Below are positions 26,377 to 64,000 of a DNA stretch of 64,000 nucleotides, piece after piece (the first letter of the stretch is position 1; each line of letters starts with the position of its first letter). The position numbers and the translations under genes were made by a program. The notes beneath the pieces are model-generated. The model was not told where the DNA came from, searched no databases, and saw nothing but the letters and a program-made list of their open reading frames with translations. Location of the stretch: positions 175,551-239,550 of the IMG/VR virus record IMGVR_UViG_3300033183_000491. One strand, written 5' to 3'.

Positions 26377-26378
26377 TT

Positions 26379-31100: not shown

Positions 31101-31175
31101 GTGATAGAATTGATCCCTATCATGTTAGGACTATTATTCCTCTCGATACCAATCTCGTTGATAATATATTGGTAA
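31101..31175 (+). CDS. 24-aa hydrophobic peptide
   Basis: GTG start with AGGAGG SD: MIELIPIMLGLLFLSIPISLIIYW. Confidence 0.5.
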   Translation: MIELIPIMLGLLFLSIPISLIIYW

Positions 31176-31247
31176 GTGTAATCTCTAAACAATCCTGTTA
31201 TAATAACTCGTACCTTCCATACATTTCTAAATACAAAAGGAGTTCTT

Positions 31248-31829: not shown

Positions 31830-31992
31830 GGGGTAGGAGGGGATTGGGAGGATTATCTCTCGATCGTACAAATCACTCAGACGGCGATATAATCGTTCGA
31901 TGAGTGTAACATTAAATGATCTAGTCTATAATATAGATGTAGGTCAATCGTTGAAACATTCACTCTCTCATTCAGTCTGAAAGGACAAACTC

Positions 31993-32493: not shown

Positions 32494-32728
32494 GAAAAGG
32501 ATTCTGAATGTTTCTTCTAGTCGTTACAATCTTCACATTCGTTTGCTACACTTATCTTCGCATGCTTTGGCTTATGACTAAGCTTCTCCCGATCACTCTC
32601 AAGACGATGTACTTCATCTGAGCTTGACTCGATCATCACACCTCTCGATTCGTCAACTTTTCAAAAGTGTAAATTGACTTAGTCATTGATATAATCAACA
32701 AAAACATTTAAACAAACGAGGAAAACAC

Positions 32729-33028
32729 TTGAATCACACAGTTTTAACACTCATCACATCTTTCTGTCTTTCATCTCTTGCATACCACGCATCACAGGAT
32801 CAAGTTGAGATCTTGGAGTTTGACCCAATCGTTATTACTGCTCAGCACTCGACGATTGTCTTTGAAGAGACAGAGATTCGATCTGATGGTGACGCTGAAG
32901 GGATTGATTGGGATCACAATGAAGAGTTCTGGTGCGCAACGCATCCTGATGAATGTCTCATCGATACAAATCTTCAGGGAGGCGACGATGATGACGACGA
33001 TGACTCTGACGAAGAGTTTGGTTGCTAA
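32729..33028 (+). CDS. Secreted/membrane-anchored acidic protein
   Basis: TTG start, hydrophobic leader, poly-Asp tail. Confidence 0.6.
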   Translation: MNHTVLTLITSFCLSSLAYHASQDQVEILEFDPIVITAQHSTIVFEETEIRSDGDAEGIDWDHNEEFWCATHPDECLIDTNLQGGDDDDDDDSDEEFGC

Positions 33029-33113
33029 GACTTAAATTGGTTTGTGTACTTTATTTCGGACACTGATATAATAAAACGTACGGTTAATCTTCACACACTC
33101 AAAGGACATTCAA

Positions 33114-33488
33114 ATGAGAAACAACAAAAAGATCTGGACAAGAGAAGAGATCAATCAGATGATTATGCTTAATGATCACGCCGTTGAGAGAGCAATCGTT
33201 CGACTATATAAGGCACAGACTCAAGATGAAACTCTTCAGTCCAGATCAAAGCATCGCAATGGTCGAGGTTTCAACGCAGCTCACGCAAAATCTGGGACTC
33301 TCATCGCTCAGTGGATCTTGGGTCTTGATGGCAAGAATCGTCAAAGATACGAGCCTAAGAGTCTTCTACACCCAAGATGTTCAAAGCTTCTTGGTCCACG
33401 CATCAACTGTTTCAATGTGATCGCTAAAGCTAGGAAGATCGCGCTCATCCATTCATCACAACTCGTTGAGATTGCTAACAATCGTTAA
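33114..33488 (+). CDS. Hypothetical phage protein
   Basis: ND.AVERAIVRLY..QT.DE...NGRGFN; promoter 33044. Confidence 0.7.
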   Translation: MRNNKKIWTREEINQMIMLNDHAVERAIVRLYKAQTQDETLQSRSKHRNGRGFNAAHAKSGTLIAQWILGLDGKNRQRYEPKSLLHPRCSKLLGPRINCFNVIAKARKIALIHSSQLVEIANNR

Positions 33489-33501
33489 GAAAGAGGTTAT
33501 C

Positions 33502-33597
33502 ATGCTAACACTCACAGATTATGCGGCTTATGGGGGAATCATTTTAGCTTGCATCCTTGCTCTTGCCTTTATCTACGTTTTCATCGTTGAGATGTAG
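33502..33597 (+). CDS. 31-aa TM peptide
   Basis: GAGG SD; MLTLTDYAAYGGIILACILALAFIYVFIVEM. Confidence 0.55.
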   Translation: MLTLTDYAAYGGIILACILALAFIYVFIVEM

Positions 33598-33697
33598 TAA
33601 TCATAGAATTCATCGGTTTGATAGTGTATATTGAATCGTTGAATAGTATAATAACTCATCAATCATATTAATCTAATCAAACAAAGGAATCATTCAG

Positions 33698-33913
33698 ATG
33701 GATGTTAACACAAAGCCTAGAAAGCAAAGACGACGTCTAACAGATAAACCAGCTCACACAGTTTGGTCTGAAAAGCTTGACAAAGGAGGATACATTATCT
33801 TTGCAGGGATTCGAGGAACAGACGCTAAGACTATCGCTGGAGGAGCAACAAGTGAGGAAACTCTTGAGTACAACATGAGGAAAGCAAAGCTCAAGTTTGG
33901 TCTCAAACTCTAG
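33698..33913 (+). CDS. Basic hypothetical protein
   Basis: Promoter 33624, AAGGA SD. Confidence 0.65.
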   Translation: MDVNTKPRKQRRRLTDKPAHTVWSEKLDKGGYIIFAGIRGTDAKTIAGGATSEETLEYNMRKAKLKFGLKL

Positions 33914-34032
33914 GATGCTCGAGGTTTATACCTCATGCTTCGTCAATTTTCCAAAGTGTATATTTAGATATCCTATATTATAATAAACCACAAGGTCCAT
34001 TAAACTTAACTTCTTCATCTAAAGGACACAAT

Positions 34033-34586: not shown

Positions 34587-35219
34587 ATGACTAACTCAAA
34601 CATTCAATCAGACAATCAAAACGAGGAGATCAACATGTCAACAATTCAAACACTTTTTCAAGAATATCTATCTGATGGCGGCAAACCACAGGTCACATCC
34701 TTTAGGGTTCACATCGAGGCTCTCATCAAGAAAGAGATTAAACCACTTTGTGGAAGATCCGGAAAGTCTGTTGGTGATAATGATTGGAGGACTCAACTCA
34801 TTGAACGCTTCAAGGGACGAGGAGCAAAATGGCAATTTGTCTCTCTCGAAGAGATTGCTCCCACTCTTGATCGGTTTGACACAGAAGGGGTTGATACAGA
34901 AGATTACAGACAATGGACTCAATCTCAAGGAAAAGCTTGGATTAGGTTTATGGCTCCCCGATTAAATAATGGAGTTAAGTCTGCTGCTTTTACAGTTCAC
35001 ACTCTTGGTTCAACAATCTATCAGCCACACCAGGTCCATTACATTGAGCTTGATAGATTGGATGAAGTTATTACACCACTTGATTCAACACCACATGCAT
35101 TAAAACTCGAGGAATCTATTCAACCAGATGAAGATCAGATGACAGACATTCAGACTGAGCTTGGACAAGAGGTTTATCCGGCTGAAATGGATTGTCTAGA
35201 TGATGATCTAGGTCTATAA
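34587..35219 (+). CDS. Early paralog family member 2
   Basis: FKGRGAKWQFVSLEEIAPTLD...QGKAWIRF; promoter 34525. Confidence 0.8.
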   Translation: MTNSNIQSDNQNEEINMSTIQTLFQEYLSDGGKPQVTSFRVHIEALIKKEIKPLCGRSGKSVGDNDWRTQLIERFKGRGAKWQFVSLEEIAPTLDRFDTEGVDTEDYRQWTQSQGKAWIRFMAPRLNNGVKSAAFTVHTLGSTIYQPHQVHYIELDRLDEVITPLDSTPHALKLEESIQPDEDQMTDIQTELGQEVYPAEMDCLDDDLGL

Positions 35220-39434: not shown

Positions 39435-40061
39435 ATGTATATGAGGTGTGAAAACATGAATTTTACGCAGAAGATGTTTGACGAGTTAGATATATGTGAT
39501 TTGAATTATGCGAAGTTTATAGGTTGTGATTTTAAGGGATTGAAGATTGAGTTAGGAGATGTTTATTTATCTGCGATGACGTTTGAGAATTGTGATATGA
39601 GGGAGTGTGTATTGCAGATGAATGTGGCGAATTTATCGTTTAGTGGTTGTGATTTGAGTGGGAGTAGGTTTGAAGATTCTGGTGTGATGGTTATGTATTT
39701 TGAAGAAGCAAATTGTGAGGGAGTGGATTTTAGGGGGATAGATTATGATTTAGAAGAAGCTTTGGGAGAGTGTTTGAATGGATATAATCATGATCCGCGT
39801 GTGTTGTTTAATGGAGCGAATTTGAGGGGAGCGTTGTTTGATGGATTGAGATTGAATCATGGACAGTTTGAGGGAGCTGATTTGGAAGGGGCTAGTTTTA
39901 GGGGGTGTGATTTGAGTTCTGTTGAGCCTTTGGAGTATGAGCAAGAAAATACATATTTTGATTATTCTGCTGGCACAAGTTTTTTCTTTGCGAGTGTGAA
40001 GGGGGTGGATTTTGAGGGAGCAAATTTGGAGGGAGTGTTGGGATTGGAAGAAGAAATTTGA
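39435..40061 (+). CDS. Pentapeptide-repeat protein
   Basis: ANLRG/ALFDG/ADLEG/ASFRG/CDLSS repeats. Confidence 0.88.
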   Translation: MYMRCENMNFTQKMFDELDICDLNYAKFIGCDFKGLKIELGDVYLSAMTFENCDMRECVLQMNVANLSFSGCDLSGSRFEDSGVMVMYFEEANCEGVDFRGIDYDLEEALGECLNGYNHDPRVLFNGANLRGALFDGLRLNHGQFEGADLEGASFRGCDLSSVEPLEYEQENTYFDYSAGTSFFFASVKGVDFEGANLEGVLGLEEEI

Positions 40062-44041: not shown

Positions 44042-44123
44042 TAATGTGTAAATAAAACATTCTTTGGATATAATAAATCACAAGGTCCATCAAACAAACA
44101 CTCATTTCATTATAAGGACAAAA

Positions 44124-45296
44124 ATGAATATTTCAGATTATACAAAAGAGTTTTCTAATCTAACAAATCTGGTTTCAGAGATTACTTCAGTTATCAAGAC
44201 TCGCGAAGACAAAAGCAATTTATGGGCTTCTTTTAAAAGAGAAAACGAAGACAAAATTAAGAATCTCCTTGGGATTACTAATAATGATATTGATAACCCA
44301 TGTAATCTTATTAACTTTGATATTGATGACGACAAACAACTACTTCTTCTAAACTATACATCTCAAGCTCATAATGTTTTACATGCTTATGATGATGGTT
44401 GGTCTAACGAACTTAAGCTTTGTAGAGGATTGGTTTTTTCTTTTTCCGATGGCGTTTCATTAGTGAGCCGAGGATTCGAAAAGTTCTTTAATGCAAACGA
44501 GTTAAAAGAAAACACATATGAAAGTTTATTATCCAATCATGATAATAAAAAGACATATATTGCTTACGAAAAGGTTGATGGTCATATGATTGAATATTTT
44601 GAATATGATAATCAACTTTGTGCAACAACAAGAGGAAAGTTTAATACTAGTTCTTCGTTAGAGTCACTAAGTTTAATGTCATACAAAGAATGGAATTTAG
44701 CAAAAGGATATTATAAACTTTGTGGACATGACCTTATGTCTATTGTAACAGAGCTAGTAACACCTTCAACAGAAGTCCTGGTTAACTATGAAGGACAAGA
44801 GAGTATATATCTTCTATCAGCTTATGATAAATCAGGAAATAAAATAGATCAAACTTTACTTAAAAACTTAGTGTTCGTAATTAAAAATGCAAAGATACCT
44901 AAATCTAAAAGATTCACACTGTCAGGTATGTTCATAGAAGTTGCAAGAAGAGATATTGATAATAATGAAGGATGGGTTCTTAATTTAAATGGAACTCTAT
45001 TGAAATTCAAATACAATAACTATATTGGTCTTATGGTAAGTAAAAAGATATGTTATAAATACCTTATGCAACGAATATTAACTAATACAACTGAAAAGAT
45101 GTTCTCTACGCTTGATGATGACAACATGAAGATTGTTGATGTGTTAAAGAAAAATATCAACATTAAAGTTATTGAATGTAAAAAAGAAGAATCTTATAAA
45201 CCATTATATAGTCTTTGGTCAGATGAAGAAGGAAGTTTAAACTATTTCAGACTTGTATGTAGAAAATTTTACAAAGAGTTTATTTTATCTATTTGA
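44124..45296 (+). CDS. RNA ligase, T4 Rnl1-like
   Basis: CRGLVF, SRGFEKFFN, motif I EKVDG, ATTRG, EGWVL...KFK; start revised to ATG after AAGGA and promoter 44046. Confidence 0.85.
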   Translation: MNISDYTKEFSNLTNLVSEITSVIKTREDKSNLWASFKRENEDKIKNLLGITNNDIDNPCNLINFDIDDDKQLLLLNYTSQAHNVLHAYDDGWSNELKLCRGLVFSFSDGVSLVSRGFEKFFNANELKENTYESLLSNHDNKKTYIAYEKVDGHMIEYFEYDNQLCATTRGKFNTSSSLESLSLMSYKEWNLAKGYYKLCGHDLMSIVTELVTPSTEVLVNYEGQESIYLLSAYDKSGNKIDQTLLKNLVFVIKNAKIPKSKRFTLSGMFIEVARRDIDNNEGWVLNLNGTLLKFKYNNYIGLMVSKKICYKYLMQRILTNTTEKMFSTLDDDNMKIVDVLKKNINIKVIECKKEESYKPLYSLWSDEEGSLNYFRLVCRKFYKEFILSI

Positions 45297-46544: not shown

Positions 46545-47267
46545 ATGGATAATCATCAAGAAAACTTAAACTCAACTGATATTTTGGTTTCTTCTTTAAT
46601 CAATCACTTTAATGACAACAAACAAGGATTTACTTCTTATAGATTTCTTATTGACAAAATCTTGAAAGAAAACATTAAACCTTTGACAAAGGGAAAATCT
46701 AATATTAAAACAGACAGTGGATGGCGGTCTGACCTTATGGAAAGGTTTAGTGGAAGAGGAGCTAAATGGGTCTTTGTAAGCCTACAAGACATTGAACCTA
46801 CGTTAAAATCACTTGAAGATTCTGGTATTAATTGTGACTTCTATAGAAAACATATTAATATAATTGGAAAAGCTTGGATTAGATTTATTGGTCCTCGTAT
46901 TAATAATGGAGTTAACAGCGCCTCATTTGAGGTAAGAACAGAAGGTTCGACAATTATCAGTTCCAACCAAGTCCATTATATTCCAGTTGAATCATTAGAC
47001 GATACAATTGAAATGTTAAATACAACTCCTAAGTCACTTAAGCTAGAAGAAGATTCAGCTCCAATGCCTAAGACATCTAAACCAAAGAAAAAGTCTCCAA
47101 AACCAAAGAAACAAAATCTTTTAGAGACATTAGGAAATGAAATCAATGAAGAGCTTCAAGAAGTTGAATTAAATATTCCACCACAAAATGATGATCCGGA
47201 TGATTGGGAAGCCTTTCTCGCTTCTGAAGGTTTAATCGACGATGATTTTATGAATGATGATATCTAA
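46545..47267 (+). CDS. Early paralog family member 3
   Basis: FSGRGAKWVFVSL...GKAWIRF; Lys/Pro linker and acidic tail; promoter 46469. Confidence 0.8.
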   Translation: MDNHQENLNSTDILVSSLINHFNDNKQGFTSYRFLIDKILKENIKPLTKGKSNIKTDSGWRSDLMERFSGRGAKWVFVSLQDIEPTLKSLEDSGINCDFYRKHINIIGKAWIRFIGPRINNGVNSASFEVRTEGSTIISSNQVHYIPVESLDDTIEMLNTTPKSLKLEEDSAPMPKTSKPKKKSPKPKKQNLLETLGNEINEELQEVELNIPPQNDDPDDWEAFLASEGLIDDDFMNDDI

Positions 47268-47333: not shown

Positions 47334-47406
47334 CCTCCTATAGCTCAGCGGTTAGAGCAGCACTCTTATAAGGTGAAGGTCCCCAGTTCAATCCTGGGTA
47401 GGAGGA
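47334..47406 (+). tRNA. tRNA-Ile(TAT)
   Basis: Acceptor CCTCCTA/TAGGAGG, D arm GCTC/GAGC, loop CTTATAA, TTCAATC T loop; no encoded CCA. Confidence 0.85.
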
Positions 47407-47440
47407 CTTTAACATTTTAAACTTATACAAGGATATTATC

Positions 47441-47635
47441 ATGACACACGCTACATACACAACCTTCAACAATCAGACTGATGTTTTCGTTTCATTCTCA
47501 GCAGTTTCTCATGTTATCAATGACAAAGAATCAGGATGTTGGATTTGGTTTCACAGTGGAAAATGCATTCATGTAACAGAGAGCATGTCTGAAGTTACTG
47601 ACGACATGGTAGATTATTTCTCAACTAGAAAGTAA
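47441..47635 (+). CDS. Hypothetical protein
   Basis: AAGGA SD. Confidence 0.6.
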   Translation: MTHATYTTFNNQTDVFVSFSAVSHVINDKESGCWIWFHSGKCIHVTESMSEVTDDMVDYFSTRK

Positions 47636-47639
47636 TTAA

Positions 47640-47945
47640 ATGAATCTAACGGTTAAAGAATCATTCTTATTAAGACAAGGATTTGGAAAAAGTAATATTT
47701 TCTTTCCTGAGAATTCTAGAATTAAGTTTATTAAAGAAACTTATAGTTTTTATCACTCTTATTATAAGTCGCACAGTTATAAAATTCTAATTCATTTTAA
47801 AACAATTCCGATTGAATTAGATCTTCAAAAGAAGACTGATAGGGAAACTTACGAAGTTATGAAATGTAATCTTATTCATAAAAACTTGAGTCAAATAACT
47901 TGGAATGATTTATTTAATGAGGAATGTCCATTAAGTGTAACTTAA
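47640..47945 (+). CDS. Hypothetical protein
   Basis: Packed ORF. Confidence 0.55.
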   Translation: MNLTVKESFLLRQGFGKSNIFFPENSRIKFIKETYSFYHSYYKSHSYKILIHFKTIPIELDLQKKTDRETYEVMKCNLIHKNLSQITWNDLFNEECPLSVT

Positions 47946-48005
47946 TAAAATTTGTATTATAATATTTAAAACATCATTCAATCATATATTCATAAGAGTT
48001 AAATC

Positions 48006-48170
48006 ATGAAAAATGAAGATATATCAAGTATACTATATCTTGTTACTTTTGTAACTTTAGTTTTTTCCTTAATTTATCTTATTACTTTGTTTCCAACATA
48101 TTTTTCAGGTTTTTTCTTTGGAATAGTATCATATTCTTTGCTTGATGCATTCAATAAAAAAGACTTGTAA
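48006..48170 (+). CDS. 54-aa membrane protein
   Basis: Promoter 47935; hydrophobic. Confidence 0.5.
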   Translation: MKNEDISSILYLVTFVTLVFSLIYLITLFPTYFSGFFFGIVSYSLLDAFNKKDL

Positions 48171-48196
48171 AAGATATTCTATTATAGGCGGTTATT

Positions 48197-48394
48197 ATGG
48201 AAAAATATTTTTCTTATGTAGGTACACATTCTCTTGAAGAAGCAAAACAGAATAATACTGTAAATATAATATTTCATTTGTCTTCAAGAGAAATTGCTAT
48301 TAAAAGATGTGATAGAACATGGAAAGACAAAGAATATTCTCTATATACCTTTGAAAACTTTCAAAACAACTCAACATTTACTAAGATTATATAA
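48197..48394 (+). CDS. Hypothetical protein
   Basis: Packed ORF. Confidence 0.55.
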   Translation: MEKYFSYVGTHSLEEAKQNNTVNIIFHLSSREIAIKRCDRTWKDKEYSLYTFENFQNNSTFTKII

Positions 48395-48403
48395 GGATTT
48401 TAT

Positions 48404-48688
48404 ATGGATTATTATGACTTTGCAGAAACAGCTGCTGTAATTGAAAAAGAACTTGGTATTAGAATGCATTTAGATATTGTGTTTAATAATCAGTTATTAA
48501 ATAAATACTTTAACTATTCTTATAATAAAAAAGAAGACATTTTAACTATTAATTTTGAATTAGATGAAGGCAGCGCGACTATGAACATATATGAATTATA
48601 TTCAGAAGAAGTCGATGATTTTGATTATGATTTTAATGATGTTCTTAAGAAACATATAGAGAATCTAGGTAGAACATGGACAGAGTAA
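48404..48688 (+). CDS. Acidic hypothetical protein
   Basis: AAGGA SD. Confidence 0.6.
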   Translation: MDYYDFAETAAVIEKELGIRMHLDIVFNNQLLNKYFNYSYNKKEDILTINFELDEGSATMNIYELYSEEVDDFDYDFNDVLKKHIENLGRTWTE

Positions 48689-48945
48689 TCTTTATGTTTA
48701 AAGAAAAGGTTTATGCAAGAATAGTTACAGATTTTCAAGATCAAAACATCGACATTGATCAAACAAATGAATATACTATGTATGAACTTCACAGGTCAAT
48801 GAAAGATCTTAAAAAATACTCGGAAGTTTTTATTAACCCTAGCAATCCAAAACAACTGATAGCGACATCAAAAGGACGTCTTCTTTCAATAGAAATCTTG
48901 TCAGAAATAACTTGGTTTGATTTAGATTATTATTATGGACAATAA
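48676..48945 (+). CDS. Hypothetical protein
   Basis: Packed ORF; start uncertain. Confidence 0.55.
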   Translation: MDRVIFMFKEKVYARIVTDFQDQNIDIDQTNEYTMYELHRSMKDLKKYSEVFINPSNPKQLIATSKGRLLSIEILSEITWFDLDYYYGQ

Positions 48946-49048
48946 ATGAACTGTTATTATGATTATTTTATTAATGCTTGTGTCTGTGAACAGCAAGTAG
49001 AAAATATTCCCCTTTCAGAATTATTTCTTTTTGTTATTGAGATTTTTA

Positions 49049-49345
49049 ATGTATAAACTTATATTGTTTCTTTCTATGACGTTTTTTTTGTTTTATGGCT
49101 GCACTGATGCTGAACTCACAAAGTTTACAACATTAGGTCAAAAAGCAGAAATTATTTGTCGAAGTGGTGGTATAATATCTTTTCATGGTATCTCAACTGG
49201 TAAAGTATTAAATGAAAAAAACAGCGATGGATATTATGCTAAATGGGAAATAATCCAAGCCCCAGATTACAAACATTCAAAAGCTGGAGATTTTAGAACA
49301 GCAACACTTTCAAGTGATTGTAATATTATTTATATCGAAGACTAA
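49049..49345 (+). CDS. Putative lipoprotein
   Basis: Leader ending FFLFYGC; CTDA..K...LG..A.I.C.SGG pattern. Confidence 0.65.
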   Translation: MYKLILFLSMTFFLFYGCTDAELTKFTTLGQKAEIICRSGGIISFHGISTGKVLNEKNSDGYYAKWEIIQAPDYKHSKAGDFRTATLSSDCNIIYIED

Positions 49346-49369
49346 AACATGAAAACGGGAGTAATTTAA

Positions 49370-49738
49370 TTGACTATTAAGAACATTCTTTTTATCCTTA
49401 CTGTAATATTAATTGGTTGTGAAGCAGAACAAAAAAGTATTAGTAACGTTGATTTCTTGTTAGATTCTGGTTATCAAAACCTAGAATGCAAATTAAAATA
49501 CAATATCGAAGATAATACATACGAATCTTTAGCAGAAGTAATCCCAAAATCTAATAAACTTGAAATGCTTTTAGCAAGATGTATAAATGATAAATGCGAT
49601 TATTTTTCATTAGAATCAAAAATAATGCCTGCAAAGATTTTATGTCAAAAGTTCTATTCGAACAATAAAACTGAATATGATTTTAATCAAATTGTTCTTA
49701 CTTATAACACTGAATATTTTAAAGATATTAAAGAATAA
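49370..49738 (+). CDS. Putative lipoprotein
   Basis: Leader ending VILIGC; GGGAG SD. Confidence 0.6.
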   Translation: MTIKNILFILTVILIGCEAEQKSISNVDFLLDSGYQNLECKLKYNIEDNTYESLAEVIPKSNKLEMLLARCINDKCDYFSLESKIMPAKILCQKFYSNNKTEYDFNQIVLTYNTEYFKDIKE

Positions 49739-49812
49739 TTTGTGTAAATATAAGTTTTATAAGTTATAATAATATATAATAAATACTTTCTTAAAATTTA
49801 AAGGAGAATATA

Positions 49813-50004
49813 ATGAATATTCCATATATTAGCTTAATGCTTCTTTATCTAATTCCAATTAGTGCAATGCTCGTAATTAATTCTTCGAAAGATATTAAAG
49901 ATATCTCTAAGAGAGTTAAAGAGGGAGATTACCTTGTAATTGTAGAAAAATGTGCTGCTCCTATTTTGTCATTAGGAATTATGTCTTCTTTTTATCTATA
50001 TTAA
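49813..50004 (+). CDS. Small membrane protein
   Basis: Promoter 49742, AAGGAG SD. Confidence 0.6.
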   Translation: MNIPYISLMLLYLIPISAMLVINSSKDIKDISKRVKEGDYLVIVEKCAAPILSLGIMSSFYLY

Positions 50005-50008
50005 AACT

Positions 50009-50296
50009 ATGATGAAAAATATTATTGATTATGATCTTGGAGATATTTCTATAAAGAAAGTTTCAAATGGATGGATCTTACTGGAAGGTTCTCCCCTTGA
50101 AGAAGGAAAAGTTATTTTTTCTGCATATGAATCTAAAGAAGCTTATGAGATTAATAAATCTGACTCCACTGAAGATGCTAAATCTCTTAAAAGGCTTCTA
50201 GAAGATGTCTTTTCAGGGTATTTAAGATCTAAACATTACGGTGGTCTAGAAATCAAATTCCATGAAAGTGGATATGAAATCGAAGATCAAGAATAA
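50009..50296 (+). CDS. Hypothetical protein
   Basis: ISIKKVSNGWIL motif. Confidence 0.6.
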   Translation: MMKNIIDYDLGDISIKKVSNGWILLEGSPLEEGKVIFSAYESKEAYEINKSDSTEDAKSLKRLLEDVFSGYLRSKHYGGLEIKFHESGYEIEDQE

Positions 50297-50397
50297 AAAT
50301 TCAAAAGATTAATAAAAATTAATTTGTGTAAATTTAAACCAATTAGGTTATAATAAACCATAAGGTAAATATTAAAAAACATTTTATAGGATAAATA

Positions 50398-50559
50398 ATG
50401 ACTACGCACATTTCATTGTTTCAATTTGGATGCGAAATTTTTGGTTACGATAATGCTATGAAAATGAACTCTAATAAATTAAGATCATATTATGATGATT
50501 GGAAAACTACAACATATTCTATTAAACAATACAAAGCTCTACTAAACACGAGAGGATAA
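50398..50559 (+). CDS. 53-aa hypothetical protein
   Basis: Promoter 50326, AGGA SD. Confidence 0.5.
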   Translation: MTTHISLFQFGCEIFGYDNAMKMNSNKLRSYYDDWKTTTYSIKQYKALLNTRG

Positions 50560-50564
50560 TTAAA

Positions 50565-50951
50565 ATGTCTAATTTTCAAACTTATATTTATGATTACCTA
50601 AATGAGAAGCTAGGAAGCGACAACGGCACTTCTGAAAAATGGTGGAGTTGGAAGCATGGTATTTTATACCCTAACACTAAAAATATTGATATTGATTTAG
50701 AAAAAAACTTGCTTAATAACAATGTAGTTGTTGGGTTTAATTTTGATACTACACTTTGCAATCAAAAAGATATATCAAGGTTTTTAAAGTCACTAAATGT
50801 AAACTATAAAGACGATACTGATAGTAGGAATAAAAATAATAACTTGAGACTAAAAGTTTGTTTTTCAAATGAAAATACTGATGTTAATCGATTTATATTT
50901 AAATCGATCATGAGGTATTCTTTTATTAATAAAAACATTAGTATTAACTGA
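50565..50951 (+). CDS. Hypothetical protein
   Basis: GAGGA SD. Confidence 0.6.
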   Translation: MSNFQTYIYDYLNEKLGSDNGTSEKWWSWKHGILYPNTKNIDIDLEKNLLNNNVVVGFNFDTTLCNQKDISRFLKSLNVNYKDDTDSRNKNNNLRLKVCFSNENTDVNRFIFKSIMRYSFINKNISIN

Positions 50952-50954
50952 TCT

Positions 50955-51263
50955 ATGAAAGAAGAGCATTTGTTATTATTTTCTAAATATAAAAGTGAAT
51001 ATTCAAATCAATTATCGAAAATACTCTTAGCTGATGAAGATGATCTTTTTTTCTTAGATAAAAAAATAGACTCAGACTTATATAAAAGGTTTATTAAAAC
51101 ATCAACAAGTTCAGGAAGTTTATCTTTTAAAATTGAGAAAAGTAATTATAAAATAAAACTAATGTCTATATTTGGGATACCTTATTTACTTGACGAAAAC
51201 AATGGTTGCAATCATATTGTAATCAAAAAATTTGATCTATCAAGAGTTCCTAATAATCTCTGA
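50955..51263 (+). CDS. Hypothetical protein
   Basis: Packed ORF. Confidence 0.55.
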   Translation: MKEEHLLLFSKYKSEYSNQLSKILLADEDDLFFLDKKIDSDLYKRFIKTSTSSGSLSFKIEKSNYKIKLMSIFGIPYLLDENNGCNHIVIKKFDLSRVPNNL

Positions 51264-51366
51264 TAGATTTAGAATCAATATTTCTATATTGACTTTTACT
51301 TAGTTCTATTATTATATAATGGTTCTAAGTTACCCAAACTATTTTATCTATTTGAAAGGACATACA

Positions 51367-51762
51367 ATGGGAAACATGATGTTTGACACTAACCGCTTTA
51401 TCGAGAACACTTCAGTCAATCAAATGAAAAACGGAACAATTCAGTTTATGGATACATATAATCCAGGAGTATATTATACAGCACATAGGAATGGAACAGT
51501 AAACCGAGTTATTAAGACAAACGAAACAGTTATCACACACGATGGAACTAATACAACTCAACAAAATGTAAGAATGAAGACTGAGTATAATCGAATTAAC
51601 TATCGCCCTTCTAGTAATAGAAACGATTTTGTTCGTCTATATCGACTTTCAGATCAACTAGGAAGAATCCAAGAAGTTGCTGCATATTATCAACCAAGAA
51701 ATAATAAAACAATGAATGTTTCAAAATCTGATTCACAAACTATTATTACAACTCCTCGTTAA
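51367..51762 (+). CDS. Hypothetical protein, paralog of 38818..39147
   Basis: QMKNGTIQF...YYTAHRNGTVNR; start revised to ATG after AAGGA. Confidence 0.65.
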   Translation: MGNMMFDTNRFIENTSVNQMKNGTIQFMDTYNPGVYYTAHRNGTVNRVIKTNETVITHDGTNTTQQNVRMKTEYNRINYRPSSNRNDFVRLYRLSDQLGRIQEVAAYYQPRNNKTMNVSKSDSQTIITTPR

Positions 51763-51844
51763 TTTTGTTTAACATCTAATACATAAATAATATAATACAT
51801 AATGAACTTCTTTTGATAAACATATATTTTAAGAAGTTCACTAT

Positions 51845-51917
51845 GGGCCTTTGTTGTAATGGTTAGCATCGCACTCTCATAAAGTGTTTGGTCTGGGTTC
51901 AAGTCCCAGGGGGCCTA
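51845..51917 (+). tRNA. tRNA with CAT anticodon (Ile2 or Met)
   Basis: Anticodon arm GCACT-CTCATAA-AGTGT, T arm CTGGG-TTCAAGT-CCCAG; acceptor has several G:U pairs; no CCA. Confidence 0.75.
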
Positions 51918-52226
51918 CTAGTTTATTTTTTTGCCGCTAAAACTTTTGTCTTTAGTCTTAGAGAAAATATATCCTCCTCTTTCATAATCACGATTATTAC
52001 TCTTGTCTGAGATTAATTCTTCAACGCTTTCAGGGAGTTCTCCGTAACTATGATCATATTCTATGATATCAATATTTAATTCTGGGAAAATTTCTCCTGA
52101 TGTATTTAAAGAATGAATATTTTGAAAGGCGTCTTTTGTAAGTTGACTTTGATACTTTTCATTGATGAAGTTATTATTCCATTCTGTTAATAACTCTTTA
52201 AACTCTCTTCTATTTAATTTGCCCAT
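51918..52226 (-). CDS. Hypothetical protein (lone minus-strand gene in the right arm)
   Basis: FKELLTEWNNNFINE N-terminal motif like left-arm proteins; AAGG SD. Confidence 0.55.
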   Translation of the reverse strand: MGKLNRREFKELLTEWNNNFINEKYQSQLTKDAFQNIHSLNTSGEIFPELNIDIIEYDHSYGELPESVEELISDKSNNRDYERGGYIFSKTKDKSFSGKKIN

Positions 52227-52303
52227 TGAATAAACCTTTTAATTTTTTATGTGTAAATTAATTATTAACTTATTATAATAATAAAAAAAAGTTAGGATAT
52301 AAA

Positions 52304-53599
52304 TTGTCAAATAAAAAAAACGATTATAGAATTAAAAACATTGATCTAGCAAATTGGGGTCTTAAAGAAGTTAAGATTGCTGAAAAAGATATGCCAGGCC
52401 TTATGTCATTAAGAGAAAAATATTCTGGAACAAAACCTTTAACTGGAGCTAGAATATCTGGATGTTTGCATATGACAATTCAGACAGCAGTTTTAATTGA
52501 TACTTTAGTTGAACTTGGTGCTGATGTGAGATGGATGACATGTAATATTTATAGCACTCAAGATCATGCAGCTGCTTATATTGCGAACAAGGGAATTCCT
52601 GTTTTTGCATGGAAAGGAATGTCTGAGTCTGAATATGATGAATGTTTAAATGATGTTATTTGGTTTGGAGACCAAGGACCAAATATGATCTTAGATGACG
52701 GTGGAGACTTAACTAAATTTATTATTGAAGAACACCCTGAATTAATAAATGAGATTAGAGGAATCTCTGAAGAAACAACAACTGGAGTTCTTAGACTTAG
52801 AGAATATGAACAACAAGGAAAACTTCCAGTTCCAGCAATTAACGTCAATGATTCTGTAACAAAATCAAAATTTGATAACAAATATGGATGTAAAGAAAGT
52901 TGCGTTGATGCTATTAGAAGAGCAACTGATACTATGATGGCTGGTAAAGTTGCAGTTGTTGCAGGATATGGTGATGTTGGTAAAGGATCAGCAGCCTCTT
53001 TAGCATCTTCAGGATGTAGAGTTATTGTGACAGAAATCGATCCTATTTGTGCTCTTCAAGCTGTTATGGATGGATTTAAAGTAACTACAATGGAAGAAGC
53101 TGTTAAAGATGCAGATATTATTGTTACAGCAACAGGAAACTTTAATGTAGTTAATGAAAAACATTTTAAACTAATGAAAGATAATTCTATTGTCTGTAAT
53201 ATTGGTCACTTTGACAATGAGATTGATGTTAAATGGTTAACGAAAAACACTGAAGAAGTTAATATAAAACCTCAGGTAGACATGTATAACTTTGATAATA
53301 AGTCAATTATTCTTCTTGCTAAAGGAAGATTAGTTAATCTAGGTTGTGCAACAGGTCATCCAAGTTTTGTAATGTCTGCATCTTTTACAAATCAGGTTCT
53401 TGCTCAAATTGAATTATGGTCTAAATCGTCTTTCTATGAGAATAAAGTTTATGTTCTTCCAAAAATTCTTGATGAAGAAGTTGCAAGACTTCACTTAGAA
53501 AAAGTTGGAGCAAAGTTAGAATCATTAGACAAAAACCAAGCTAAATATATTAATGTTAATGTTGAAGGTCCTTTTAAAACAGAAGATTATAGGTATTAA
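52304..53599 (+). CDS. ahcY: Adenosylhomocysteinase (SAH hydrolase)
   Basis: [86 protein letters not shown]-terminal YRY. Confidence 0.97.
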
Positions 53600-53989
53600 A
53601 TGAGATTTATAATAGACGAAGTTATTTCTGAAAATTATTCTCCACGAAAAATTAAAGAAATGAAAAGTAATCTTGTAGATATTTTTACAGAAATCCACAA
53701 GATAAAAGATTGGAAATGGGAAATTTCTGAAGAAACAATGCAAATATGTATTAGAACAGGAAGATCTTATCAAGATAACTCTCAAGATACTGACCCTACT
53801 ATATGGATTGCATTAATCTGGGCAAATAAAAAAGGGTCAACTAGGTCACCAGAATGTGACAGAGAAATATTTATTTCTAAAGCAACAGCAAATAAATCTT
53901 CTGATTTACAAAATGTATATACATATCATTCGTACTCAGATCTTATCCAAAAATACAATTCAGGTAATTTAAAAAATATTATAAAATAA
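53600..53989 (+). CDS. Hypothetical protein
   Basis: Starts immediately after the ahcY stop. Confidence 0.6.
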   Translation: MRFIIDEVISENYSPRKIKEMKSNLVDIFTEIHKIKDWKWEISEETMQICIRTGRSYQDNSQDTDPTIWIALIWANKKGSTRSPECDREIFISKATANKSSDLQNVYTYHSYSDLIQKYNSGNLKNIIK

Positions 53990-54083
53990 TTTTATACATT
54001 CCTCATTTCGATTATATAATAAAAACATAATTCCTAATGAGGAATATTTAAACAATCTTTTAAATTTAAGAATATAACAATAT

Positions 54084-54156
54084 GCTGGTGTAGCTCAGTT
54101 GGTAGAGCTGGCGATTTGTAATCGTCAGGTCGGGGGTTCGAGTCCCTCCTCCAGCA
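54084..54156 (+). tRNA. tRNA-Thr(TGT)
   Basis: Cloverleaf; loop TTTGTAA; TTCGAGT; no CCA. Confidence 0.9.
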
Positions 54157-54203
54157 CTCCCGTAATTTAACAATTACACACAGACACAGAAAGAAGTTTT
54201 ATT

Positions 54204-54407
54204 ATAGGTGATTCAAACAAAAATGGTTATGAGATTCGTGAAAGCTTACTTGGTATGGCAGTTGGAATTCTTCAAGAAAAAAATAACACATTAAGAGAAA
54301 ATGAATATCTAAAGCCTGAAGGTCAGAGAGACGAAATTCAACCTTATACTGTCGATGAAGTTCTTAAGACTGCAGAAACTCTTTATCAGTTTGTTTCGAA
54401 AAAGTAA
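54204..54407 (+). CDS. Small phage protein with apparent ATA start
   Basis: (I)GDSNKNGYEIRESLLGMA...EVLKTAETLYQFVSKK; no in-frame ATG/GTG/TTG before the conserved-looking NGYEIR. Confidence 0.55.
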   Translation: MGDSNKNGYEIRESLLGMAVGILQEKNNTLRENEYLKPEGQRDEIQPYTVDEVLKTAETLYQFVSKK

Positions 54408-54457
54408 TATTAATTAATACTATAATATGAGCATTCATTGTTCATATTATATAATAG

Positions 54458-54529
54458 GCACTAATAGCTCAGTGGTAGAGCAAGCGGCTGTTAACCGCTC
54501 GGTCCTAGGTTCAAATCCTAGTTGGTGCG
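54458..54529 (+). tRNA. tRNA-Asn(GTT)
   Basis: GCACTAA/TTGGTGC; loop CTGTTAA; no CCA. Confidence 0.92.
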
Positions 54530-54532
54530 TAA

Positions 54533-54614
54533 GCCATCATGGCGGAATAGGTAGACGCAGGAGACTTAAAATCTCCCGCCTTAGGGCGTGCCGGTTCGAT
54601 CCCGGCTGATGGTA
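54533..54614 (+). tRNA. tRNA-Leu(TAA)
   Basis: GCCATCA/TGATGGT; loop CTTAAAA; long variable arm; no CCA. Confidence 0.92.
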
Positions 54615-54617
54615 TTT

Positions 54618-54690
54618 GGATTGTTAGCTCAGTTGGTAGAGCACCGGACTCTTAATCCGTCGGTCCTGGGTTCGAGCCCCAGACAATCCA
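54618..54690 (+). tRNA. tRNA-Lys(CTT)
   Basis: GGATTGT/ACAATCC; loop CTCTTAA; discriminator A then TTC (no CCA). Confidence 0.92.
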
Positions 54691-54694
54691 TTCA

Positions 54695-54766
54695 GCACTC
54701 GTAGCTCAGCGGAAGAGCAGTGGCCTTCTAAGCCATTGGTCGTAAGTTCAAATCTTACCGAGTGTA
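54695..54766 (+). tRNA. tRNA-Arg(TCT)
   Basis: GCACTCG/CGAGTGT; loop CTTCTAA; no CCA. Confidence 0.92.
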
Positions 54767-54799
54767 CTTTTAAATTAATTCAAAAGACAAGACTTTAAC

Positions 54800-55149: not shown

Positions 55150-55518
55150 ATGAAACTTCCAAATAGTGCTTTAGAATTAGCAATGTCACAAGCAATGAAA
55201 TCTCCTATGCAACATATGCATGGTGCAGTTATTTGGAAAAAAGGAAAAATCATTGGAGCAGGATACAATTATCATTTAAGTGCACCAAGTCCTAATAATA
55301 GACAAGTTTCAATTCATTCAGAGAAAGATTGCTTAAATGGTCTAAGGGGAGATCAGATTTATGGAGCTGATATGTTAGCTGTTAGGGTAACAAAATCTGG
55401 ACACTTATCATCTGGTGCACCTTGTAAAGGATGTAGAAAACTTTTAAGAAGAAAAGGAATAAGAAAAGTTTTTTGGTTTGATGATGATGGAGAATTATCT
55501 TATACAAGACTTAATTAA
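55150..55518 (+). CDS. Zn-dependent cytidine/dCMP-deaminase-fold protein
   Basis: HGAVIWKKGKIIGAGYN, SIHSE, APCKGC. Confidence 0.82.
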   Translation: MKLPNSALELAMSQAMKSPMQHMHGAVIWKKGKIIGAGYNYHLSAPSPNNRQVSIHSEKDCLNGLRGDQIYGADMLAVRVTKSGHLSSGAPCKGCRKLLRRKGIRKVFWFDDDGELSYTRLN

Positions 55519-61845: not shown

Positions 61846-62322
61846 ATGTCTAGAAACTGGAAAACAGGTAAAAGAGAAATCATAAACTTCAGTGATATTT
61901 GTAATATCCTTGAAGAAGTATCAAAATCAAAAAATCATAAAATTATAATTGGTTCTGATAGTGTTAAACTTGGATATGATTTTATTTTTACAAAGGCAAT
62001 ATGTATTCTTAATAAAGACTTCTATGATAGAAGATATTTTTATTTTAGAGACAAAATAAAAGATGATTCTTATTTAGACTTATCTAAAAGACTATTAAAA
62101 GAAACATCTGATTCTTTAGACCTAGCAATTAAATTAAAAGATAAATTTAATAATGCAAACATAGAAATCCATGCGGATGTTAATCCTGACTCAAAACATA
62201 TGTCTTCTAAATATAAAAACATGATATCAGGGTATATACAAGGTTGTGGATTCGAAGTAAAGGTTAAACCTAATTCTTTTGTTGCATCATCTATTGCAGA
62301 CCAACATACAAGAAAAAGATAG
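61846..62322 (+). CDS. RNase H-like YkuK/DUF458-family protein
   Basis: IIIGSDS, EIHADVN, KVKPNSFVASSIAD. Confidence 0.8.
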   Translation: MSRNWKTGKREIINFSDICNILEEVSKSKNHKIIIGSDSVKLGYDFIFTKAICILNKDFYDRRYFYFRDKIKDDSYLDLSKRLLKETSDSLDLAIKLKDKFNNANIEIHADVNPDSKHMSSKYKNMISGYIQGCGFEVKVKPNSFVASSIADQHTRKR

Positions 62323-62842: not shown

Positions 62843-62890
62843 TAAAATTTGTGTCTAAATTATACATAACATAAATTTAAAGGAGAAATT

Positions 62891-63256
62891 ATGTCAATCA
62901 CAAATTTAGACACAGTTGTTAATTCTTTCTTAAGAGACTTTGATATGTATAATAAAAATACCAGCTCTTTATATACATATAAAATTTATGCAAAAGACAA
63001 TGATATTATCTTTAAATGCTTAGCACCAGGAATGTCTAAAGAAGATTTTGACATTTCTTTTGACAGCAAAAAATTATTTATTAAATCTCAGAAAGATTCT
63101 GGAGACAAAGACTTTAAAACTTCTTTTAATGAGTCTATTAATCTCTATAAAAAAATAGATGTAGATAATAGTTATGCCGATTTATCTAAAGGGATTCTCA
63201 CTATTACTATGCCTTTAGATAAGTCAATACATAAAAAGAAAATATCTTTTAGATAA
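62891..63256 (+). CDS. Small heat-shock protein (Hsp20/alpha-crystallin)
   Basis: LAPGMSKEDFDISF...LFIKS...ADLSKGILTITMP. Confidence 0.85.
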   Translation: MSITNLDTVVNSFLRDFDMYNKNTSSLYTYKIYAKDNDIIFKCLAPGMSKEDFDISFDSKKLFIKSQKDSGDKDFKTSFNESINLYKKIDVDNSYADLSKGILTITMPLDKSIHKKKISFR

Positions 63257-63274
63257 TATAAATTATTCTTAAAT

Positions 63275-63303
63275 AAAAAAACCAGCTTAAAGCTGGTTTT
63301 TTT
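63275..63303. terminator. Bidirectional intrinsic terminator
   Basis: A7-CCAGCT-TAA-AGCTGG-T7 between convergent genes. Confidence 0.85.
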
Positions 63304-63326
63304 GTATCTAAATTTAGATATATTTA

Positions 63327-63557
63327 TTATCTTGAACTATATAAAACCTCATGACCTTCAGTTATTTCTATTGATTCTATATTGTCTTCTAAAGATCCTA
63401 CATAACCTATACCATCTATATAAAGTTCGCAATCAGATGAATATAGCTTTGCTCCATATTTATCTAATAAAACTCTTAGATCACTTAAAAAATTAGTAAT
63501 CTTGTCGCTAGATGATGATCCTAGAACTACAACTTCTTCTTTAAACCCTGATGTCAT
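63327..63557 (-). CDS. Hypothetical protein
   Basis: Start revised to MTSGF (AAAGG SD). Confidence 0.55.
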   Translation of the reverse strand: MTSGFKEEVVVLGSSSSDKITNFLSDLRVLLDKYGAKLYSSDCELYIDGIGYVGSLEDNIESIEITEGHEVLYSSR

Positions 63558-64000
63558 TGTTACCTTTCTTTCTTGTTTTATAAATATTGACAAATTCCTG
63601 GAATTGTAAAAGCAATAAAATATGCAACAGCTAAATAAATTGGTGCATTTGTTTGATTGTTGTTTATCATAATAAACTCCTTTTTTGTGATGTAATTATA
63701 TCTAAAAAAGTCATTTATTATATAAAATTTATATTATTATTAGACATTGACAAAATATTGTTATCAATAAGGATTTTAAACCACTTAAGATTATCAGACG
63801 TAATATAGTCACATTCACACAGAACAATACAGACTTTCCCTTTCCAAGATCCATTATTTATTATTCCTAATCTATTAGCTGACTTGAGTTTCATACGTCT
63901 TGTTTCGTCAATCTCAGTCTAGACACTAAACGAATATAATAGCGATTATGACAATTATAAACACCCAAAATAAATTCTCTCTTCTATTTTGATCACAACC

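What the first reader, a model, noticed from the sequence alone, without database searches (positions are those of the whole stretch)
52251..53599. Intact adenosylhomocysteinase under a phage early-type promoter
Seen: a full-length AhcY with all recognisable catalytic and NAD-binding motifs, in the short form lacking the ~40-aa insert after DDGGD. It has phage-like AT-rich codons and a GTGTAA-N17-TATAAT promoter at 52251, so it is integrated into the phage regulon. Established: AhcY removes SAH, the product inhibitor of SAM-dependent methyltransferases; phages such as T3 instead destroy SAM. Inference: this phage boosts methyl flux for DNA/RNA modification (anti-restriction or tRNA maturation). 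In my recollection ahcY is an uncommon phage auxiliary gene.
Basis: partly seen in the sequence, partly recalled or inferred. Interest (0 to 1): 0.65.

Follow-up and report, generated by a model that had tools for sequence, protein, structure and literature searches.

The report
Jumbo-phage SAH hydrolase gene (ahcY)
A complete 240-kb T4-like jumbo phage carries an intact, selection-maintained S-adenosylhomocysteine hydrolase gene under one of its own recurring promoters. The gene is inherited across a whole lineage of such phages, some of which carry the rest of the methyl cycle beside it.

Summary
Window 52304-53599 (+) encodes a 431-aa short-form adenosylhomocysteinase. It scores 616 bits against NCBIfam TIGR00936 (cut-off 498), is about 69% identical to solved Bacteroidota enzymes, and keeps every catalytic and NAD motif.

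The GTGTAA-N17-TATAAT site at 52251 belongs to a real promoter family. There are 16 copies in the window (0.09 expected by chance) and 26 in the genome. All are co-oriented with genes, and none lies in the structural block.

The contig is a complete 239.5-kb T4-like phage, not a chimera. Codon use is phage-like and dN/dS is 0.06-0.10.

ahcY is nearly absent from sequenced isolates: 4 of 50,697 GenBank phage records, none of this lineage. It is nevertheless conserved across an uncultured jumbo-phage lineage (TerL 55-87% identical). There its protein forms its own clade, apart from every named cellular sequence I sampled. In relatives it sits beside a QueF-like gene, and in some inside a contiguous metK-queF-like-metH-ahcY cassette.

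This phage keeps only ahcY. I found one generic class-I methyltransferase and no DNA methyltransferase of the families tested. The methyl-cycle reading is therefore supported, and the anti-restriction DNA-methylation reading is not. Viral ahcY has so far only been catalogued, so this is a new member of a known kind.

The parts
52251..52279 (+). Phage promoter. It has a -35-like GTGTAA (52251-56), a 17-nt spacer and a -10 TATAAT (52274-79), ending 24 nt before the ahcY start.
   Evidence: Read directly. It belongs to a family of 16 sites in the window (0.09 expected) and 26 in the genome, all co-oriented with genes. The same promoter and leader are kept in relatives L132 and L133. Only 4 of 63 positions differ in L133, although the synonymous divergence of ahcY is about 1.15.
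52294..52297 (+). Shine-Dalgarno-like AGGA, 6 nt before the TTG start.
   Evidence: It is identical in L132 and L133.
52304..53599 (+). ahcY: a 431-aa short-form S-adenosyl-L-homocysteine hydrolase with a TTG start.
   Evidence: dN/dS is 0.06-0.10 against three phage relatives. It is syntenic in IMG/VR contig L014.
53600..53989 (+). 129-aa ORF of unknown function. Its ATG directly follows the ahcY stop codon, so it is probably co-transcribed.
   Evidence: no Pfam family. Homologues occur in L014 (67% identical, not adjacent to ahcY there) and in L132.
51918..52226 (-). Truncated remnant (96 aa plus a new tail) of a reverse-strand gene that is 312 aa in a near-identical strain. It occupies the slot where relatives carry a queF-like gene.
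   Evidence: It has no Pfam family, and there is no residual similarity to queF.
51845..51918 (+). tRNA-Met(CAT), the upstream boundary of the ahcY slot. It is conserved in L014.
54084..54157 (+). tRNA-Thr(TGT), downstream of the ahcY unit. It is conserved in L014.
54458..54767 (+). tRNA cluster Asn-Leu-Lys-Arg. Together with tRNA-Ile at 47334-47407, all seven tRNAs of the genome flank ahcY.

Best explanation
The gene is a working, phage-encoded S-adenosylhomocysteine hydrolase. It has been inherited vertically within a lineage of uncultured T4-like jumbo phages.

It is transcribed from its own copy of the phage's commonest promoter type. That type serves the small-ORF/tRNA block and the replication and nucleotide-metabolism genes, but not the structural genes.

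In the infected cell the enzyme splits SAH into adenosine and homocysteine. This lowers the SAH/SAM ratio and keeps SAM-dependent methyltransferases, host or phage, from product inhibition. It also returns homocysteine to methionine and SAM regeneration.

Relatives encode more of the same cycle: a QueF-like protein, and in some MetK and MetH, next to ahcY. This phage keeps only the SAH-removing step.

Shown: gene integrity, family membership, purifying selection, recurrence and conservation of the promoter, phage origin of the contig, lineage-wide conservation, and linkage to metK/metH in relatives.

Inferred: enzymatic activity, early timing, direction of flux, and which methylation reaction benefits.
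For: Identity and integrity.

Selection: dN/dS is 0.063 (20 synonymous and 5 non-synonymous differences against L132), 0.085 and 0.10.

Phage genome:
- It has direct terminal repeats and CheckV rates it 100% complete.
- It carries a T4-type major head protein, portal, TerL, baseplate and tail genes, and prohead protease.
- Composition and codon use match the rest of the genome.

Synteny and kinship:
- 34 genes of this genome have counterparts in the 21-kb locus L014.
- ahcY-bearing IMG/VR contigs have TerL 55-87% identical to this phage's.
- TerL and AhcY pairwise identities co-vary, r = 0.92 over 15 non-independent pairs.

Separate clade:
- A branch with 99% SH-aLRT support separates two groups. 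One holds the window, all TerL-verified kin and the proteins with phage-like contexts. The other holds 27 named cellular genomes (FastTree gives the same split).
- The best AhcY identity in 401 evenly drawn Bacteroidota genomes is 71%.

Methyl-cycle linkage in relatives:
- metK, queF-like, metH and ahcY are contiguous in L030 and L126. The order is ahcY-metK-queF-like-metH in L123.
- A queF-like gene lies directly upstream of ahcY in L014, L016, L019, L038, L121, L125 and L133.
- metK lies next to ahcY in L031-L037.
- Sources.

Promoter. One copy precedes the phage's own sigma-70-family gene. That argues the class is read before the phage sigma factor exists.
Against: - No activity, transcript or metabolite data exist.
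- This phage lacks MetK, MetH and the QueF-like gene. It has only one detectable methyltransferase, so the methylation that benefits is unidentified.
- SAH hydrolysis is thermodynamically unfavourable and needs removal of its products by host enzymes (established knowledge).
- The host is unknown.
- The trees are unrooted.
Cellular members of the 'phage' clade therefore cannot be excluded.
Confidence: 0.7

Rival explanations
1. AhcY is there to sustain heavy phage-directed DNA or RNA methylation, either as anti-restriction protection or for maturation of the seven phage tRNAs.
For: - SAH is a general methyltransferase inhibitor (established knowledge).
- ahcY lies in the middle of the genome's only tRNA island.
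- Some relatives carry MT-A70 or other methyltransferase-like genes within a few kb of ahcY.
- The phage has one class-I methyltransferase, 94% identical in its closest relative.
Against: - No DNA methyltransferase of the N6_N4, C5, D12, Dam, MT-A70 or N6_Mtase families was found, and no FtsJ. The MT-A70 model rang in no control genome, so that one result is uninformative.
- No further methyltransferase turned up among 102 more ORFs scanned with Pfam. In one batch only 25 of 49 families were displayed.
- The class-I enzyme reaches no specific NCBIfam cut-off.
- It was not found in G002, G003 or G015, which all carry ahcY.
Confidence: 0.12
2. This is a salvage reading. The useful products are adenosine, for the adenine nucleotides of a 71% A+T genome, and homocysteine, for methionine. 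Relief of methyltransferase inhibition would be secondary.
For: - The phage invests in adenine nucleotide supply. It has a contiguous operon of a GMP-reductase/IMPDH-family gene, PurA and a PurB-like lyase at G000 10040-13631.
- It also carries thymidine kinase, a nucleoside deoxyribosyltransferase, ribonucleotide reductase and ThyX.
- A relative has IMPDH and Thy1 close to ahcY.
Against: - Flux through SAH is bounded by methylation flux. It is tiny next to the purine demand of replicating a 240-kb genome (inference from established metabolism).
- No adenosine kinase or deaminase was noticed.
- Linkage in relatives is to metK and metH, not to purine genes.
Confidence: 0.1
3. The enzyme runs in the synthetic direction. 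It would build SAH from adenosine and homocysteine to shut down host methyltransferases, a functional analogue of phage SAM-destroying enzymes.
For: The equilibrium of the reaction favours SAH synthesis (established knowledge).
Against: Co-location with SAM synthetase and methionine synthase in relatives makes sense only for a forward cycle. No supporting data exist.
Confidence: 0.04
4. This is an artefact or passenger reading: recently captured host DNA, or a chimeric assembly, with no role in the phage.
For: The nearest named cellular homologues are Bacteroidota, and the nearest cultured phage by TerL infects Flavobacterium.
Against: - The same gene sits in the same slot in independent assemblies.
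- GC3 and codon use are phage-like.
- dN/dS is 0.06-0.10.
- It has a conserved promoter of its own.
- The best cellular identity is only about 71%.
Confidence: 0.02

Closest known systems
Cellular short-form adenosylhomocysteinase of Bacteroidota (solved examples 6gbn and 6aph)
   Same: - Same two-domain fold family and length class.
- The same catalytic, NAD-binding and C-terminal tail motifs.
- End-to-end alignment at E = 1e-198 and 2e-190, and 67-71% identity to genome sequences.
   Different: - It is encoded by a phage, has phage codon use and is driven by a phage promoter.
- It belongs to a separate, well-supported clade that held no named cellular genome among those sampled.
Viral ahcY 'auxiliary metabolic genes' catalogued from IMG/VR (Kieft et al. 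preprint, doi 10.1101/2021.01.05.425418)
   Same: The same gene family on uncultivated aquatic viral contigs. It is listed among organosulfur and methionine-cycle auxiliary genes.
   Different: That survey only lists the gene. Here there is a complete genome, a promoter, selection statistics, a lineage-wide phylogeny and the gene neighbourhood (queF-like, metK, metH).
Phage-encoded SAM synthetase (metK) auxiliary genes
   Same: Another step of the same cycle carried by phages. In relatives of this phage metK lies in the same cassette as ahcY.
   Different: This phage has no metK.
Phage T3 SAM-degrading enzyme (SAMase)
   Same: A phage enzyme acting on the SAM/SAH pool early in infection (established knowledge).
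   Different: The logic is opposite. T3 removes the methyl donor, whereas AhcY removes the inhibitory product and so favours methylation. The proteins are unrelated.
T4-type early promoters read by the host sigma-70 holoenzyme
   Same: - A perfect TATAAT -10 element.
- An upstream hexamer 16-18 nt away.
- Many copies before small early-region ORFs and nucleotide-metabolism genes, and absence from structural genes.
   Different: The upstream hexamer GTGTAA matches TTGACA at only 3 of 6 positions. Neither the sigma factor that reads it nor its timing is known. The phage also encodes a sigma-70-family protein of its own.

Membership tests
Adenosylhomocysteinase (AhcY/SAHH) | Substrate-binding AdoHcyase domain plus an inserted NAD-binding domain | tested here: met
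   PF05221 at 3.3e-128 and PF00670 at 2e-76, covering the full profile length.
Adenosylhomocysteinase (AhcY/SAHH) | Score above the curated equivalog threshold | tested here: met
   TIGR00936 scores 616.2 bits against a cut-off of 497.6.
Adenosylhomocysteinase (AhcY/SAHH) | Catalytic residues. The human numbering is recalled from memory: His55, Asp131, Glu156, Lys186, Asp190, His301, His353. | tested here: met
   Every motif block that holds them is intact and aligns without gaps to 6gbn and 6aph. The residue numbering itself was not checked against a human sequence here.
Adenosylhomocysteinase (AhcY/SAHH) | NAD site: a GxGxxG loop, an acidic residue after the second strand, and the C-terminal Lys/Tyr tail from the neighbouring subunit | tested here: met
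   GYGDVGKG at 221, TEIDP at 243, K425 and Y429 in the tail.
Adenosylhomocysteinase (AhcY/SAHH) | NAD-dependent reversible hydrolysis of SAH | not testable with these tools
   This needs an enzyme assay.
Short-form AhcY (no ~40-aa insertion in the substrate-binding domain) | Length of about 430 aa and a gap-free alignment through the DDGGD-EETTTG region with short-form structures | tested here: met
   The protein is 431 aa. It aligns end to end with chains of 431-445 aa. Most chains of 464-498 aa align in pieces, with the best stretch starting near residue 146.
Virus-encoded auxiliary metabolic gene | Lies inside a bona fide viral genome, with viral genes on both sides and no sign of host flank | tested here: met
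   The record is 239.5 kb with terminal repeats. It has T4-type hallmark genes and synteny with L014, L132 and L133. GC3 and codon use are phage-like.
Virus-encoded auxiliary metabolic gene | Maintained by purifying selection in the viral lineage | tested here: met
   dN/dS is 0.063, 0.085 and 0.10.
Sigma-70-type phage early promoter | Two hexamers 16-18 nt apart, recurrent, co-oriented with genes and close to their starts | tested here: met
   There are 16 sites in the window against 0.09 expected and 26 in the genome. Most lie 18-60 nt before a start codon. The motif is also present in L014, L132 and L133.
Sigma-70-type phage early promoter | Recognised by the unmodified host holoenzyme and active early in infection | not testable with these tools
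   There are only indirect hints. No site lies in the structural block, and one site precedes the phage sigma gene. The -35-like hexamer matches TTGACA at 3 of 6 positions.
Complete phage-borne methyl cycle (metK + metH + ahcY) | All three genes present in the genome | tested here: not met
   No MetK or MetH was found in this genome. The full set is present in relatives L030, L123 and L126.

The most novel reading that the evidence does not exclude
ahcY here is the last-retained piece of a phage-borne activated-methyl-cycle module that is ancestral to a lineage of aquatic T4-like jumbo phages.

In its fullest form the module reads metK, queF-like, metH, ahcY. Its QueF-like T-fold protein keeps the NADPH-type motif and the substrate-binding Glu, but carries an invariant Gly in place of the catalytic Cys.

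That protein would then be a new enzyme of the module rather than a preQ1 synthase. One possibility is a pterin or folate reductase that feeds methionine synthase. These phages would then run their own methyl cycle during infection.
Probability: 0.3. Interest if true: 0.7.

Novelty: new member of a known kind. Interest (0 to 1): 0.45.

Why it matters
Phages are known to attack the methyl-donor pool, as SAM-degrading enzymes do, or to carry single methionine-cycle genes.

Here the opposite strategy, keeping the cycle running by clearing SAH, is fixed across a whole lineage of large uncultured phages. It has its own conserved promoter, and in some members it extends to a contiguous metK-metH-ahcY cassette.

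That gives a concrete, assayable handle on how jumbo phages manage one-carbon and SAM metabolism in the infected cell. It also flags a QueF-like protein of unknown chemistry that travels with the module.

For this particular window the result is more modest. It is a well-documented, functional auxiliary gene whose beneficiary methylation is still unknown.

Tried and rejected
- **Chimera or recent host capture.** Rejected on synteny, codon use, selection, and a best cellular identity of only about 71%.
- **DNA methyltransferase partner.** Six-frame searches with PF01555, PF00145, PF02086, PF05869, PF05063, PF02384 and PF01728 found nothing in the genome. PF05063 also rang in no control genome, so that one negative is weak.
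- **Radical SAM, MetK, MetH and QueF in this genome.** None was found, and there is no queF remnant upstream of ahcY.
- **PurA-like gene as PurZ (2-aminoadenine genomes).** Rejected. It matches canonical PurA at 1e-61, against 5e-11 for the solved PurZ chains (6fm1, 6fko) and 1e-19 for a chain titled PurA-like (7vf6).
- **Generic sigma-70 consensus scan around the gene.** It gave no more hits than shuffled sequence (27 against 22.8 +/- 4.8) and missed the real motif. No terminator-like site was found.
- **** failed on a coordinate slip and was repeated correctly. **** failed on a handle format and was redone through.
- **Literature.** Searches linking phage AhcY with QueF, 7-deazaguanine or jumbo phages found nothing relevant.
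- **Not attempted:** structure prediction (the protein is about 69% identical to solved enzymes), complex prediction (no binding claim is made), and the large representative-protein search (not needed).

Full report
**What is there**

The window is the last 64 kb (175551-239550) of a 239,550-bp IMG/VR virus record. The record has direct terminal repeats and CheckV rates it 100% complete. Its G+C content is 29.3%.

The ORF at 52304-53599 (+) is uninterrupted and encodes 431 aa.
- It matches both AhcY Pfam domains over their full length (3e-128 and 2e-76).
- It passes the NCBIfam equivalog TIGR00936 at 616 bits, against a cut-off of 498.
- It aligns end to end with solved short-form enzymes of Bacteroidota: 6gbn at 1e-198 and 6aph at 2e-190.
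- Every block that carries catalytic or NAD-binding residues is intact, including the C-terminal Lys/Tyr tail.
- Most solved chains of 464-498 aa align only in pieces, with the best stretch starting near residue 146.

The start codon is TTG.
- An in-frame stop lies inside the promoter, at 52259-61.
- The next in-frame ATG would delete conserved sequence.
- An AGGA lies 6 nt upstream.
- Two relatives use the same TTG and leader.

**The promoter**

GTGTAA-N17-TATAAT is at 52251-52279, as reported.
- The pattern GTGTAA-N16-18-TATAAT occurs 16 times in the window, all on the + strand between 31176 and 58671. Dinucleotide shuffles predict 0.09.
- Genome-wide there are 26 copies, and every one is co-oriented with the local genes. 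Most end 18-60 nt before a start codon.
- They lie only in two regions. One is the minus-strand replication and nucleotide-metabolism block (6.6-77 kb). The other is the plus-strand small-ORF/tRNA block (206.7-234.2 kb). None lies in the structural block at 77-205 kb.
- One copy precedes thyX. Another precedes the phage's own sigma-70-family gene at G000 25962-26711. The second case suggests that the class is read before the phage sigma factor is made. That is an inference.
- The motif recurs in relatives L014, L132 and L133.
- In L133 the 63-nt ahcY leader differs at only 4 positions, although synonymous divergence within ahcY is about 1.15. The regulatory region is therefore itself conserved.
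- A generic sigma-70 consensus scan does not pick up this family and finds no excess over shuffles.

**It is a phage gene, not host DNA**

- The genome encodes a T4-type major head protein, portal, large terminase, baseplate wedge, gp25, gp19, gp15, prohead protease, gp32 and a RecA/UvsX-like protein.
- The nearest cultured phage by TerL is a Flavobacterium myovirus, at 38.6% identity.
- ahcY has 32.2% GC and 15.3% GC3. Phage genes average 29.5 +/- 4.3% and 17.2 +/- 3.6%. Its RSCU correlation with the rest of the genome is 0.954.
- 34 genes of this genome have counterparts in L014, a 21-kb locus from a 211-kb IMG/VR contig. The order tRNA-Met, ahcY, tRNA-Thr is kept there.
- dN/dS is 0.063 against a 98%-identical strain (20 synonymous and 5 non-synonymous differences). 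It is 0.085 and 0.10 against two more distant relatives.

**How common it is**

- Among 50,697 GenBank phage records only 4 give a tblastn match. The best is 53.5% identical, and none belongs to this lineage.
- In IMG/VR a search limited to close relatives returned 25 contigs.
- Five of those contigs have a TerL 55-87% identical to this phage's. Three more share its structural genes.
- TerL and AhcY pairwise identities co-vary, r = 0.92 over 15 non-independent pairs. The two closest pairs are the same for both proteins.
- In a FastTree of 225 sequences and an IQ-TREE of 71, a branch with 99% support separates two groups. One holds all named cellular genomes, mostly Bacteroidota, plus some IMG/VR contigs. 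The other holds the window, all TerL-verified kin and every metagenome protein whose context I inspected.
- Those contexts are phage-like in five of six look-ups and ambiguous in one.
- In 401 Bacteroidota genomes drawn evenly across the phylum, the best identity is 71%.

Three caveats apply.
- The trees are unrooted.
- Many members of the clade are short metagenome contigs that I did not inspect.

Viral ahcY has been listed before, among organosulfur and methionine-cycle auxiliary genes in IMG/VR (also mentioned). I found no paper that goes beyond listing it.

**Neighbourhood in relatives**

- In L014, L016, L019, L038, L121, L125 and L133 a QueF-like gene lies directly upstream of ahcY.
- In L030 (a 273-kb phage, TerL 61%) and in L126 the order is metK, queF-like, metH, ahcY, all contiguous. 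In L123 the order is ahcY, metK, queF-like, metH.
- A separate set of small viral contigs has metK next to ahcY.
- ahcY is thus the constant element of a variable methyl-cycle module.

In this window the queF slot is different. It holds the 96-aa remnant of a reverse-strand gene that is 312 aa in a near-identical strain. That strain has 1.7 kb more sequence here.

**Methyltransferase content**

- Six-frame family searches of the whole genome found no N6_N4, C5, D12, Dam, MT-A70, N6_Mtase or FtsJ methyltransferase. They also found no radical-SAM enzyme and no MetK. MT-A70 rang in none of the control genomes either, so that negative is weak.
- One class-I methyltransferase exists at G000 62881-63645 (-), beside thyX. 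It reaches no specific NCBIfam cut-off.
- It is 94% identical in the closest relative but was not found in the more distant ahcY-bearing phages.
- Pfam scans of 102 further ORFs showed no other methyltransferase. In one batch only 25 of 49 families were displayed.
It does not exclude an unrecognised enzyme.

**Most likely mechanism**

The enzyme hydrolyses SAH in the infected cell. This lowers product inhibition of SAM-dependent methyltransferases and returns homocysteine to the methionine and SAM cycle. The host's own MetH/MetE and MetK would complete the cycle here, whereas phage copies do so in some relatives.

The linkage to metK and metH in kin is the strongest argument for this direction and purpose. 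Enzymatic activity, timing and the beneficiary reaction are all inferred.

I rate the rivals lower. They are adenosine and homocysteine salvage, reverse-direction SAH synthesis, and a passenger gene. The salvage idea gains a little from the phage's GMP-reductase-family/PurA/PurB-like operon. It is limited by the small flux through SAH.

**Verdict**

The specific DNA/RNA-modification purpose is not supported, and 'uncommon' does not hold within this lineage.

It is a new, unusually well-documented member of a known kind of auxiliary gene. The more novel lead lies in the relatives: the methyl-cycle cassette and its QueF-like protein lacking the catalytic cysteine.

Noticed in passing
L030:6080-6484, L014:9612-9977, L121:7595-8011, L126:2057-2509 and six more (alignment A1): The QueF-like proteins that travel with phage ahcY are 54-64% identical to the L014 copy. 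They only just pass the preQ1-synthase model (87-94 bits against a cut-off of 86.9). They have an invariant Gly where B. subtilis QueF has its catalytic Cys55. They keep the ELKSLKEY motif and the substrate-binding Glu. They are probably not nitrile reductases.
   Followed up: partly
L030:5104-11323; L126:1072-7305; L123:8001-14292: Contiguous metK, queF-like, metH and ahcY cassettes occur on phage or phage-like contigs, so these encode a complete activated methyl cycle. L030 belongs to a 273-kb phage with TerL 61% identical to this one.
   Followed up: partly
G000 10040-13631 (-), outside the window (locus L004): There is an operon of a GMP-reductase/IMPDH-family protein, adenylosuccinate synthetase and a PurB-like lyase. 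This is a guanine-to-adenine nucleotide conversion route in a 71% A+T phage. The PurA is canonical, not the PurZ of 2-aminoadenine phages.
   Followed up: partly
G000 67387-70418 (-), locus L007:10387-13418: The large subunit of ribonucleotide reductase is split into two ORFs that carry intein-splicing halves. A GIY-YIG endonuclease ORF lies between them.
   Followed up: no
G000 25962-26711 (-), locus L005:6965-7711: The phage encodes a sigma-70-family protein with regions 1.2, 2 and 3. It is preceded by a GTGTAA-type promoter at 26774. No region 4 was detected at E <= 1e-5.
   Followed up: partly
window 51918-52226 (-) and locus L132:1001-2721: A near-identical strain (98% nt) has 1.7 kb more sequence between tRNA-Met and ahcY. 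It holds a 293-aa ORF and the full 312-aa version of the reverse gene that is truncated here. The junction shows an overlap of about 11 bp.
   Followed up: yes
window 47334-54767: All seven tRNA genes of the genome lie within 7.5 kb around ahcY: Ile-TAT, Met, Thr, Asn, Leu-TAA, Lys-CTT and Arg-TCT.
   Followed up: partly
window 30001-34000: G+C rises to about 42% here, against 25-30% on either side. This is the point where the minus-strand block meets the plus-strand block, and cumulative GC skew bottoms out nearby. The region holds four GTGTAA promoters and ORFs without a Pfam family. Two of these ORFs (31248-31829 and 34587-35219) form a three-member paralogue family with 46545-47267.
   Followed up: no
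window 39435-40061 (+); window 44064-45296 (+); window 55150-55518 (+); window 61846-62322 (+); window 7252-8580 (-): Other recognisable genes in the window are a pentapeptide-repeat protein, a T4 RNA-ligase-1-like protein, a dCMP/cytidine-deaminase-like protein, an RNase-H-like protein and PhoH.
   Followed up: no
G000 62881-63645 (-), locus L007:5881-6645: The only detectable methyltransferase is 94% identical between this phage and its 211-kb relative. That is more conserved than TerL (87%) or AhcY (85%). It was not found in more distant kin, and its substrate is unknown.
   Followed up: partly
L052 (contig of a single-cell alphaproteobacterial assembly, AG-915-O07): Its short-form AhcY groups with small IMG/VR contigs that carry metK next to ahcY (L031-L037). 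The contig may therefore be a phage captured in a single-cell genome, which would give a possible host link for that other phage group.
   Followed up: no
G000, batch (1-44 kb): The phage also encodes a GroEL-type chaperonin, an Fe/Mn superoxide dismutase, a UvdE UV endonuclease, thymidine kinase and an ATP-dependent DNA ligase.
   Followed up: no
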